DNA from: Octopus bimaculoides
Lineage: Eukaryota
NCBI RefSeq assembly: GCF_001194135.2
Contig: NC_068993.1
Span: 58,911,701 to 58,973,935, forward strand
Direction: 5' to 3'
Length of the DNA: 62,235 bases
Positions 15,667-17,994 of this stretch are shown here, piece after piece. The notes under the pieces were generated by a model. It saw only the letters and a program-made list of their open reading frames with translations. It had not been told where the DNA came from and searched no databases. Made by a program: the position numbers and the translations under genes. The number at the start of each line of letters is the position of its first letter. Position 1 is the stretch's first letter.

Positions 15667-17994
15667 CTTGTGTGTATGTGTGCGTAAAGGTGATATTTGC
15701 ACATCTCTTAAACACACACCATACTCCAAAACTCTTTCTGATATATTTTCACTTCTTAACCACACATATTCTACTCCCTTTCACAGACATGGAAGTTCTA
15801 GGCCCGTGTAAGTATTGAAACCGCACCTCCTTCTTCTGTCTAGCATGTCATGTAACCTCTTCTTTCCATATATCAGTGTCTCAGTGGGTTGCCGTTTTTT
15901 TTGTTGGGTTTTTTTTTGCTTTGTTTTGTTTTTGTTTCTTTTGTGGGGTTTTCCATAGTTGTTGTTGTTGATGTCATCGTCATCGTCATCATTGTTGTTT
16001 TGTTTATATTTTTATTTCGTAACATTTAGCTTGATTTTATTTCGCTTGGGAATGAAATTATGGTAATTGCCTTTAACATCAGTACATTATGTATGTATGT
16101 ATGTATGTATTTATTTATGTATGTATGCATGGATATATGGGATATATGCATACATGTATGTATGTATATAAATATATGTATGTATGTATATATGTGTCTG
16201 TGTATATGTATATATGTATGTATATAAATATATCTACGTATGTATATATATGTGTGTGTGTATATATATGCATCTATATAAATAAATGTGTGTGTGTGTA
16301 ATGTACATATATGTGTGTATATATGTATATATATATGTGTGCCTGTGTGTGTGTGTATATTTATGCACATACTTAACACAGTCAACTTTATATCATTTTA
16401 TTATTTATTTCTTATCATATATTTACGTTACCTCTGTATGTTTGATGAATGTGCCTTAAAAACCCCACCCCACTTTATTCAAACCTCTGTAGCCACCACC
16501 TTCTTTTTTTCAAACCTCTGTAGCTACAACCCTGTTTTATTCCCATCCCTATAGCTACCACCCCATTTAGTTCCATCCTATGTTATCCAAACCTTTGAAA
16601 TTACCACCCTATTTTGTCCAAATCTCTGTCCCTGCACTCAACAGAAGGAAAAACCAGCAGTGCCGGTAGAGAATTTCTTCAAATGCAGTCGTTGTATGCA
16701 TAACTGCCACTCCTGTGTGGGCTTCTACAGCCACAGCAGTTGCCACACCACCATCAGTAGCTGAAACAATTTCTTCAGGCACAGATCCATTGGTCTCTCG
16801 AGAGAGACCGATGGATACCTACTATCAAACTACTGTATTCAGGTCCCTGTTGCTACCACTCTATATGAATAATAATAATCTTGTTCTATTTATAGTATGT
16901 CATTACATATTGTCTCAAGTGAAATGCTAATACACAAATCCAACTTTAGATACATTTTTCACATCTACTAAATATTTCCTATACTCCCAGTCCATCTTTG
17001 CACATCAAGCAACTTGCCCTGTGCACTCATAGTAGTCTGGGTATGTTTCTGACAAGCATCAGCCAATAATCTTCAATATATTTTCTATGTTAAGAGCAAT
17101 AATTATATCAACATGACTGTTATAGAGAAAGACATACAATCGTAACCAATCGGTCCTTTTCTTCAGATACCTCATCATCATCGTTTAATGTCCGCTTTCC
17201 ATGGACTAGCAAGTCAGATGACTGCGCCAGGCTCCACTCTGATCTGGCAGAGTTTCTACAGCTAGATGCCCTTCCTAACGCCATATACAATGTACTTAAA
17301 ATCACATAGCCTCATGCATCTACTTTTTCTCTCCTCAGACACTAGTATAGGATCTGAATATTTGGCTGCTGTTTATAGCAAGTCATTCAAACTAAATACA
17401 GGTTTTTGTGTATTCCAACATAATAGTATGAAACTATGAAGGAGGATCAATATAATCATGTACAACATATTATATGAGATCCTGGCATTTGTGTTTGTTT
17501 TGTCTTGCATGGCATGTAAATATCATTTAGTTTGGTGTAACATAGTGTGCTGTGTAATAAGATATTGTGGCTTCATGTGTTTCCTTGTATTAACTGCTGA
17601 ATCTAACCGAGCTCTATCAAATATCTGCCTACATGTTGATTTTTGATTTTGAAATATGCCCTGAGTTGACTTTGTCTTTCAGTACCTCTTGGTAATAAAT
17701 TCTAGGCAAGTACTTGTAGGAAAGGCATGTAGATCATTACATCTTCCTTAATCCATTGTCTCAAACAGAGTAGCATGTTTGGTCATCAGTTCATGGAGAT
17801 GTTTCACTATACATGTCATATCAAGCATCTGAATTTACTAATTGCTATAGATGTGGTTGTTGCTGTTTTTGTTGCTTACCCCTATGATCAAATGCATTAC
17901 AACCATGACCATCACGCCTTATATTCAGATACAGTACATATGCAGATACATACATACATACACACACACAAACAAAATGCTTATGCGTACACAA

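What the first reader, a model, noticed from the sequence alone, without database searches (positions are those of the whole stretch)
15787..15807. 21-nt microexon that rewrites a cadherin strand turn and adds a cysteine
Seen: branch-like CTTAAC, a pyrimidine tract, CAG, 21 nt and GTAAGT, inside a 5.2-kb intron, with GCATG 36 nt downstream. Skipping gives the canonical DFNT-G-VVSV. Inclusion gives [16 protein letters not shown], with the Cys codon split T|GT across the junction. My recollection that arthropod fat-like proteins have a similar GPC insertion here is unverified. Inference: a regulated, possibly neural, switch in the adhesion surface or disulfide state of the repeat.
Basis: partly seen in the sequence, partly recalled or inferred. 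Interest (0 to 1): 0.75.

Follow-up and report, generated by a model that had tools for sequence, protein, structure and literature searches.

The report
Ancient 21-nt microexon in Fat-like cadherin
The 21-base segment is a genuine coding microexon of a giant Fat-like adhesion gene, also present in cuttlefish, a ribbon worm and Ixodes ticks, but whether it is switched on and off between tissues could not be tested.

Summary
Inclusion reads [16 protein letters not shown]; skipping reads DFNT-G-VVSV.

The motif alone is not beyond chance: the window holds 3 such candidates on the + strand and 1 on the - strand. Conservation settles it.
- Comparing the octopus-like intron with the orthologous 12.2-kb cuttlefish intron gives one significant match (E=5e-7), which is this exon with its splice sites.
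- A 15.2-kb cuttlefish mRNA contig uses exactly these junctions (DMNVLGPC).
- A nemertean has a 21-nt exon (DMTKFGPC) and Ixodes ticks a 24-nt exon (DPAHSNGPC). Both sit in the same phase-1 intron, with the Cys codon split T|GT.
- The Gly and Pro codons differ at synonymous sites, so the peptide is under selection.

The exon replaces the conserved Gly of the D-E hairpin turn of cadherin repeat 21 (EC21). That turn lies beside a conserved linker without calcium-binding motifs. The Cys it adds has no conserved partner in EC20-22.

The proposed regulated or neural switch is untested. The kind is known, and the cross-phylum conservation was not found in the literature searched.

The parts
13065..13286 (+). 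Upstream constitutive exon (end of EC20, the non-canonical EC20-EC21 linker ITKATPLF, and strands A-D of EC21). It ends ..GTAGATTTCAACACAG and leaves one base (G) of the next codon.
   Evidence: 71% identical to cuttlefish P0122 residues 2173-2259. AG at 13063-13064; donor gtaaga at 13287.
13287..15786 (+). Upstream half of the intron, including an assembly gap (N run 14756-15632).
   Evidence: No alignable similarity to the cuttlefish intron except next to the microexon.
15755..15760 (+). Branch-point-like CTTAAC, 27 nt upstream of the acceptor.
   Evidence: TTAAC is also present at -38 in cuttlefish (L006). Function inferred only.
15766..15786 (+). Pyrimidine-rich tract and acceptor (tattctactccctttcacag).
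   Evidence: acceptor score 9.4 bits, stronger than 14 of this gene's 25 real acceptors. The cacag acceptor is identical in cuttlefish and nemertean.
15787..15807 (+). 21-nt phase-1 microexon ACATGGAAGTTCTAGGCCCGT. With the flanking G and GT it encodes D-M-E-V-L-G-P-C in place of Gly.
   Evidence: orthologous exons in the cuttlefish genome and mRNA, the nemertean genome and the Ixodes genome. It is the only significant conserved island between the octopus-like and cuttlefish introns (E=5e-7).
15808..15813 (+). Donor GTAAGT. The exon's last base is T rather than the usual G.
   Evidence: donor score 7.1 bits, stronger than 10 of 25 real donors. GTAAGT in cuttlefish, GTGAGT in nemertean and tick; T at -1 in all four.
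15843..15847 (+). GCATG (Rbfox-type motif), 36 nt downstream of the exon.
   Evidence: UGCAUG at +27 in cuttlefish and none within 200 nt in the nemertean. Background is 1.0-1.6 per kb in the two cephalopod introns. Regulatory role inferred, not tested.
15808..18498 (+). Downstream half of the intron.
18499..18620 (+). Downstream constitutive exon (strands E-G of EC21: [40 protein letters not shown]). Its first two bases, GT, complete either Gly (G|GT) or Cys (T|GT).
   Evidence: acceptor ttacag, donor ATG|gttagg. The tblastn match with cuttlefish P0122 covers 18462-18620 and is 51% identical overall.

Best explanation
Window 15787-15807 is a genuine coding microexon of a cephalopod Fat-like (FAT1/2/3-type) giant cadherin gene. 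It is spliced between 13286 and 18499. It is the orthologue of a microexon that dates back at least to the common ancestor of molluscs, nemerteans and chelicerates.

Shown:
- Intact AG and GTAAGT sites of average strength for this gene.
- A frame-preserving 21 nt.
- It is the single conserved island in an otherwise unalignable intron.
- A cuttlefish mRNA uses exactly the same junctions.
- Separate exons of 21 or 24 nt lie in the same phase-1 intron in a nemertean and in Ixodes. They encode D-x(4-5)-G-P-C with the Cys codon split T|GT.

Inferred mechanism:
- The exon replaces the conserved Gly of the D-E beta-hairpin turn of EC21 with an 8-residue loop.
- From cadherin topology, that turn lies on the N-terminal face of EC21, next to the EC20-EC21 linker.
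- This linker lacks the DxNDN and DxD calcium ligands in all orthologues.
- The longer loop and its invariant, locally unpaired Cys most likely alter the geometry or rigidity of this calcium-free joint, or provide a thiol for a disulfide with another chain or a distant domain.

Whether inclusion is constitutive or tissue-regulated is open.
For: - Sequence and frame.
- Splice-site scores within the range of the gene's real sites.
- Orthologues carrying the insert: the cuttlefish-type transcript protein P0122, Tubulanus P0154 and Ixodes P0219 have it at the same alignment column, while about 17 other orthologues have plain T-G.
- mRNA evidence: P0122 is encoded by a 15.2-kb Logan contig with one continuous 4,474-aa ORF, whereas the genomic gene spans more than 88 kb. 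Its junctions equal the genomic exon ends.
- Genomic microexons:
  - Acanthosepion pharaonis, L006 77290-77310
  - Tubulanus, L007 34195-34215
  - Ixodes pacificus, L009 22973-22996
- Intron against intron blastn: the only significant hit is the microexon.
- Synonymous variation with a conserved peptide: GGC/GGG/GGC/GGT and CCG/CCA/CCC/CCA.
- Position: EC21 of 34. An AlphaFold2 model (pLDDT 90) puts the insert in the loop between strands D and E, with the Cys as the first residue of strand E.
- The non-canonical linker is present in all orthologues.
Against: - No transcript data for the window's own species could be consulted, so use of the exon here rests on conservation.
- The motif alone is within chance expectation.
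- The exon is absent from many lineages:
  - The Lottia genome has the intron but no exon.
  - Drosophila, a beetle, Rhipicephalus ticks, the one scallop isoform seen and all deuterostome models seen lack the insert.
  - Homology across phyla therefore requires several losses.
- The structural role is inferred. The model's inter-domain confidence is low (pTM 0.55), the loop's block-mean pLDDT is about 70-80, and no coordinates were available to measure contacts.
Confidence: 0.85

Rival explanations
1. It is a tissue-regulated cassette exon. It would be included in some tissues such as neurons or muscle through a downstream Rbfox-type GCAUG enhancer and skipped elsewhere. Skipping would restore the ancestral Gly turn.
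For: - Skipping keeps the frame and recreates the canonical T-G-V turn.
- GCAUG lies at +36 here and UGCAUG at +27 in cuttlefish, against about 1.0-1.6 per kb background in the two introns.
- The exon ends in T rather than the usual G.
- From general knowledge, very short exons are often regulated.
Against: - No skipped isoform was seen in any species that has the exon. Four I. scapularis RefSeq proteins, the cuttlefish mRNA contig and gene model, and the Tubulanus model all include it. The only skipped model is an old Ixodes one.
- There is no GCAUG within 200 nt in the nemertean, and no TGC[TC] motif in the 120 nt upstream of the acceptor in any of the three species.
- Both splice sites are mid-range, not weak.
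Confidence: 0.35
2. It is a constitutively included microexon. The exon would always be spliced in, and the 'skip' form would exist only in lineages that lost the exon.
For: - All transcript-supported or RefSeq models in exon-bearing species include it.
- The splice sites are of ordinary strength.
- Selection acts on the peptide.
Against: Sampling is thin: one mRNA contig and a few gene models, with tissues unknown. The conserved downstream GCAUG in the two cephalopods hints at regulation.
Confidence: 0.5
3. It is a chance pseudo-exon, or a relic no longer spliced in this species.
For: Equally good motif matches occur by chance at 0.02-0.05 per kb, and there is no RNA evidence for this species.
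Against: - Both splice sites, the frame and the D-M-x-V-L-G-P-C peptide are intact. Only 4 of 21 bases differ from cuttlefish, and two of those are synonymous.
- It is the only significant island in the intron comparison.
- A relic would have decayed like the rest of the intron.
Confidence: 0.05

Closest known systems
Cuttlefish FAT1_2_3 (Acanthosepion pharaonis CAE1313882.1, and Logan transcript contig SRR31864756_2658)
   Same: Orthologous gene (70-73% identity over this region), same intron, same 21-nt length and phase. The acceptor (cacag) and donor (gtaagtat) are identical. The peptide is DMNVLGPC against DMEVLGPC, and a (U)GCAUG lies 27-36 nt downstream.
   Different: Four base differences in the exon. 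The intron is 12.2 kb against 5.2 kb and is otherwise unalignable. The cuttlefish has mRNA evidence and the window's species has none here.
Ixodes fat-like cadherin-related tumor suppressor homolog (I. scapularis XP_042145866-8 and XP_042145603; I. pacificus genome)
   Same: Same position in EC21, the same phase-1 intron, the Cys codon split T|GT, and a D...GPC peptide.
   Different: 24 nt (DPAHSNGPC), GTGAGT donor, 15.8-kb intron. Only the D and GPC residues are shared.
Tubulanus polymorphus (nemertean) protocadherin Fat 1-like XP_074651233.1
   Same: A 21-nt exon with a cacag acceptor and the same phase, encoding DMTKFGPC.
   Different: GTGAGT donor, an intron of only 1.8 kb, and no downstream GCAUG.
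Mini-exon peptides of LAR-type receptor phosphatases (meA and meB in PTPdelta/PTPsigma) and other neural microexons in adhesion molecules (own knowledge, not tested here)
   Same: Works alike in principle: a few residues inserted in a loop or at a domain junction of a modular extracellular adhesion protein.
   Different: Unrelated genes and folds (Ig, not cadherin). For those, tissue regulation and effects on ligand binding have been shown by experiment. Here neither has.
Alternatively spliced short exons in the cytoplasmic tail of vertebrate FAT1 (own knowledge)
   Same: Same gene family, and short frame-preserving exons.
   Different: Those lie in the intracellular domain and are not homologous. 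No vertebrate FAT1, FAT2 or FAT3 model seen here has an insert at the EC21 turn.

Membership tests
Fat-like / FAT1-2-3 subfamily of giant cadherins (host gene) | Orthology to named FAT1/2/3 or fat-like proteins | tested here: met
   The best matches are FAT1_2_3 (Sepia pharaonis), protocadherin Fat 1-like (Tubulanus, Lottia, Glandiceps) and fat-like cadherin-related tumor suppressor homolog (Ixodes, Drosophila). They are colinear over window 4152-48984.
Fat-like / FAT1-2-3 subfamily of giant cadherins (host gene) | 34 cadherin repeats followed by a laminin-G domain and EGF domains | tested here: met
   34 repeats were counted in the orthologous cuttlefish protein, which has Laminin_G and EGF Pfam hits. 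The window itself holds only the part matching P0122 residues 1245-4467, so the N-terminal repeats were not seen.
Microexon (coding exon of 27 nt or less) | Length 3-27 nt, canonical AG/GT sites, frame preserved | tested here: met
   21 nt, cacag|...|gtaagt, no stop codon, frame kept.
Microexon (coding exon of 27 nt or less) | Actually spliced into mRNA | tested here: inconclusive
   Met in the cuttlefish orthologue (mRNA contig L005 against genome L006).
Alternative cassette exon | Both inclusion and skipping isoforms in one species | tested here: inconclusive
   Only inclusion forms appear among transcript-supported or RefSeq models. The single skipped Ixodes model (EEC03038.1) is an old gene model.
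Neural SRRM3/4 (eMIC)-dependent microexon programme | Neural-enriched inclusion | not testable with these tools
   No expression data were available.
Neural SRRM3/4 (eMIC)-dependent microexon programme | UGC-type intronic enhancer close upstream of the acceptor (own knowledge of the family) | tested here: not met
   No TGC[TC] in the 120 nt upstream in octopus, cuttlefish or nemertean. This was a simple motif scan only.
Rbfox-enhanced exon | (U)GCAUG within about 100 nt downstream of the exon | tested here: met
   GCATG at +36 in the window and TGCATG at +27 in cuttlefish, absent in the nemertean. Binding and effect were not tested.

The most novel reading that the evidence does not exclude
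A microexon that predates the split of molluscs, nemerteans and arthropods, and has since been lost many times, toggles an unpaired cysteine and a longer loop. The site is the calcium-free EC20-EC21 joint of Fat-like cadherins. Inclusion would be tissue-regulated, for example through the downstream GCAUG, and would control covalent pairing or the bend of the ectodomain. That would tune planar-polarity or cell-migration signalling.
Probability: 0.12. Interest if true: 0.7.

Novelty: new member of a known kind. Interest (0 to 1): 0.5.

Why it matters
From general knowledge, microexons conserved across animal phyla are few, and most studied ones lie in cytoplasmic or synaptic proteins. This one sits in the extracellular chain of a giant planar-polarity and migration cadherin, at a joint without calcium-binding motifs. 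It carries an invariant Gly-Pro-Cys.

It gives a concrete, small and testable handle on how the long ectodomains of Fat-like cadherins are shaped or cross-linked.

It is also a useful annotation check, because gene models easily miss it or mis-place it. The Ixodes pacificus and I. persulcatus models and an old I. scapularis model do so.

If it proves tissue-regulated in cephalopods, it would add a deeply conserved example to the study of how microexon programmes evolved.

Tried and rejected
A single-exon query was used instead.
- The word-indexed protein search returned only proteins under 800 aa, so it missed the giant orthologues. A 105-aa query gave only two genomic exon ORFs.
- Locus L001, a decapodiform contig, ends 5.9 kb into the intron before any microexon. 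L002-L004, from an unidentified invertebrate, show no downstream exon within 10 kb.
- Genomic look-ups failed or gave no DNA for Argopecten, I. scapularis (two models), Glandiceps and Antedon. Bivalve and deuterostome introns could therefore not be inspected.
- The one paper that treats octopus microexons has no supplementary files held. Three further literature searches found nothing on a Fat or Fat-like microexon.
- A repeat or transposon origin is rejected: the segment is single-copy in the window.
- No structure coordinates could be read, so loop contacts could not be measured. The fold search only confirms cadherin chains. The best overall superpositions are to cadherin fragments that, from my own knowledge, have kinked calcium-free linkers (3ubh, 6eet), which is a hint only.

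Full report
OBSERVATION.
- The upstream exon is 13065-13286 and ends ..GTAGATTTCAACACAG|gtaaga.
- The candidate is tattctactccctttcacag|ACATGGAAGTTCTAGGCCCGT|gtaagt at 15787-15807.
- CTTAAC lies at 15755-15760 and GCATG at 15843-15847.
- The downstream exon starts ttacag|GTGTTGTG at 18499 and ends at 18620.
- Skipping reads D-F-N-T-G-V-V-S-V. Inclusion reads [16 protein letters not shown], with Asp split G|AC and Cys split T|GT.
- An 877-N assembly gap (14756-15632) ends 155 nt upstream of the exon, so the 5.2-kb intron length is only as assembled.

IS THE MOTIF BEYOND CHANCE? By itself it is not.
- In this intron it is the only stop-free AG+3n+GTRAG candidate with a pyrimidine tract.
- Across the window, equivalent GTAAGT candidates occur three times on the + strand and once on the non-coding - strand.
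- I built splice-site matrices from 25 real introns of this gene. The acceptor scores 9.4 bits (14 of 25 real ones are weaker) and the donor 7.1 bits (10 of 25 are weaker).
- Both sites are ordinary, not weak. Even so, 39 laxer decoy pairs exist in 32 kb of intron.
- The segment is single-copy in the window.

HOST GENE.
- A cuttlefish-type protein of 4,474 aa (P0122) aligns colinearly from window 4152 to 48984, covering its residues 1245-4467.
- That protein has 34 cadherin repeats followed by laminin-G and EGF domains.
- Named relatives are FAT1_2_3, protocadherin Fat 1-like and fat-like cadherin-related tumor suppressor homolog.
- The window is therefore the 3' two-thirds of a cephalopod Fat-like gene. 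At 70-73% identity to the cuttlefish it is probably from an octopod, which is an inference.
- The site falls in EC21.

CONSERVATION: THE DECISIVE EVIDENCE.
A search of 1.84 billion representative proteins with the neighbouring large exon returned the giant orthologues. I aligned the EC21 region locally. Three lineages carry an insert at exactly this column.

| Lineage | Protein | Peptide at the turn |
|---|---|---|
| Cuttlefish | P0122 and Acanthosepion pharaonis CAE1313882.1 | DFNT-DMNVLGPC-ILSV |
| Nemertean Tubulanus polymorphus | XP_074651233.1 | DFDT-DMTKFGPC-ALTV |
| Ixodes scapularis | isoforms X1-X3 and XP_042145603.1 | DFNA-DPAHSNGPC-VVYV |

- P0122 is encoded by a 15.2-kb Logan contig with one uninterrupted ORF. 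The genomic gene spans more than 88 kb. The contig is therefore mRNA, and its sequence ..TTCAATACAG|ACATGAATGTTCTAGGGCCAT|GTATACTTTC.. uses exactly the genomic exon ends.

The genomic copies are separate exons in the same phase-1 intron.

| Genome | Locus and coordinates | Exon and splice sites | Intron length |
|---|---|---|---|
| Cuttlefish | L006 77290-77310 | cacag\|ACATGAATGTTCTAGGGCCAT\|gtaagt | 12.2 kb |
| Tubulanus | L007 34195-34215 | cacag\|ATATGACTAAATTTGGCCCCT\|gtgagt | 1.8 kb |
| Ixodes pacificus | L009 22973-22996 | ttcag\|ACCCGGCCCATAGTAATGGTCCAT\|gtgagt | 15.8 kb |

(Coordinates.)

- An unbiased blastn of the whole octopus-like intron against the whole cuttlefish intron gives one significant hit (E=5e-7). 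It is 15744-15815 against 77240-77318, which is the microexon with its splice sites.
- The Gly codon is GGC/GGG/GGC/GGT and the Pro codon CCG/CCA/CCC/CCA across the four lineages. The last exon base, T, which makes Cys with the downstream GT, is invariant. This is purifying selection on the peptide.

DISTRIBUTION.
- No insert appears in the models or transcripts seen for the following:
  - one scallop isoform, a beetle, and Rhipicephalus ticks (six RefSeq isoforms and five transcript contigs);
  - a crinoid (six isoforms), a hemichordate (five isoforms), amphioxus and Ciona;
  - hagfish, and vertebrate FAT1, FAT2 and FAT3.
- Lottia also lacks it. Its genome has the same phase-1 intron, about 380 nt long, with no microexon.
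- Drosophila lacks the microexon as well. D. erecta isoform X1 has a 20-residue insert that reads as a retained 60-nt intron beginning GTAAGT at the same Gly codon. The intron position is therefore old.
- The simplest reading is one origin before the mollusc, nemertean and arthropod split, followed by several losses. Independent gains are less likely given the shared phase, length, D..GPC peptide and split Cys codon, but they are not excluded.

STRUCTURE.
- An AlphaFold2 model of cuttlefish EC20-22 with the insert (18-sequence alignment, mean pLDDT 90, pTM 0.55) keeps all seven strands of EC21.
- The insert is the loop at residues 156-164, between strand D (151-155) and strand E (165-169). The Cys is the first residue of strand E. 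Confidence dips to a block-mean pLDDT of 71 for residues 151-160 and 81 for residues 161-170.
- The replaced Gly belongs to the family-wide 'xIDxxTGxI' turn.
- From established cadherin topology, strand E runs down to the LDRE calcium ligands, so the D-E turn lies on the N-terminal face of the repeat, next to the preceding linker.
- That linker reads ITKATPLF instead of DxNDNxPxF, and the B-C loop reads SPNG instead of DxD, in every orthologue aligned. It is a conserved linker without calcium ligands.
- The best overall superpositions of the model are to DN-cadherin EC1-4 (3ubh) and PCDH15 EC9-MAD12 (6eet). From my own knowledge both have kinked calcium-free linkers, so this is a hint only.
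- No solved structure covers this part of any FAT1/2/3 protein.
- No second Cys is conserved in EC20-22 of the insert-bearing species, so the Cys is locally unpaired.

REGULATION.
- In favour:
  - Skipping is frame-neutral.
  - GCAUG lies at +36 here and UGCAUG at +27 in cuttlefish, against 1.0-1.6 per kb background in the two cephalopod introns.
  - The exon ends in T.
- Against:
  - No skipped isoform was seen in any species that has the exon.
  - The splice sites are of ordinary strength.
  - There is no GCAUG in the nemertean.
  - There is no upstream UGC-type element.
- I put constitutive inclusion at about 0.5 and regulated inclusion at about 0.35.

COMPARISON AND NOVELTY.
- The kind, a conserved coding microexon, is well known. 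Relatives' gene models already contain this exon.
- Four literature searches found no description of a Fat or Fat-like microexon.
- It is best filed as a new member of a known kind, with moderate interest. The interest comes from its age, its extracellular position at a calcium-free joint, and the invariant GPC.

VERDICT.
- Observation confirmed.
- Real exon: confidence about 0.85-0.9.
The turn rewrite, the added cysteine and the arthropod parallel hold.
- The switch, the neural specificity and the adhesion surface remain untested or unsupported.

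Noticed in passing
L009 22973-22996 and about 29505-29529 (Ixodes pacificus); proteins P0293, P0290: The I. pacificus and I. persulcatus gene models read DFNA-GESSILLPG-VVYV. The I. pacificus genome nevertheless holds the I. scapularis-type microexon (DPAHSNGPC). SSILLPG is the translation of the pyrimidine tract just upstream of the downstream exon, so these models probably mis-place the acceptor and miss the microexon.
   Followed up: partly
Protein P0318 (Drosophila erecta fat-like isoform X1), residues about 2300-2320: The 20-residue insert G-KFIQLSLLFENFLSFYSNS-G at the same Gly reads as GGT AAG TTT ATT.., which is a retained 60-nt phase-1 intron starting GTAAGT. 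The intron position is shared with cephalopods, but Drosophila has no microexon.
   Followed up: partly
window 13095-13130 (..[17 protein letters not shown]..) and 13200-13225 (..AVSPNGQK..): The EC20-EC21 linker lacks the DxNDN motif and EC21 lacks the DxD calcium ligands. This holds in every FAT1/2/3 and Fat-like orthologue aligned, from ticks to vertebrates, so it is a conserved calcium-free joint.
   Followed up: partly
window 14756-15632, plus 13 other N runs: The window has 14 assembly gaps totalling 5,116 N. One ends 155 nt upstream of the microexon, so the intron length and any upstream regulatory sequence are incomplete. Another gap (45880-45992) interrupts the cytoplasmic-tail coding region.
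   Followed up: no
window about 11827-12051, 27986-28100 and 39647-39860 (+); 2342-2605 (-), 27111-27299 (+), 39753-39986 (+), 50266-50532 (-): Repeated interspersed elements lie in the introns, possibly SINE-type. They give recurring pseudo-ORFs (..[24 protein letters not shown].., ..[18 protein letters not shown]..) in both orientations, together with abundant TA, CA and ATC microsatellites.
   Followed up: no
Proteins P0190 and P0337-P0350 (Rhipicephalus) against P0219 and P0288 (Ixodes): Within ticks the insert is present in Ixodes. It is absent from all six Rhipicephalus microplus RefSeq isoforms and from five transcript contigs. This is either a loss within ticks or a paralogue difference.
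   Followed up: partly
L002 13420-16621 (- strand): In an unidentified invertebrate's metagenome contig, a CCDC142-like gene lies on the opposite strand about 3-6 kb downstream of the orthologous upstream exon. No downstream Fat-like exon is seen within 10 kb. It could be a nested gene in a long intron or a rearranged contig.
   Followed up: no
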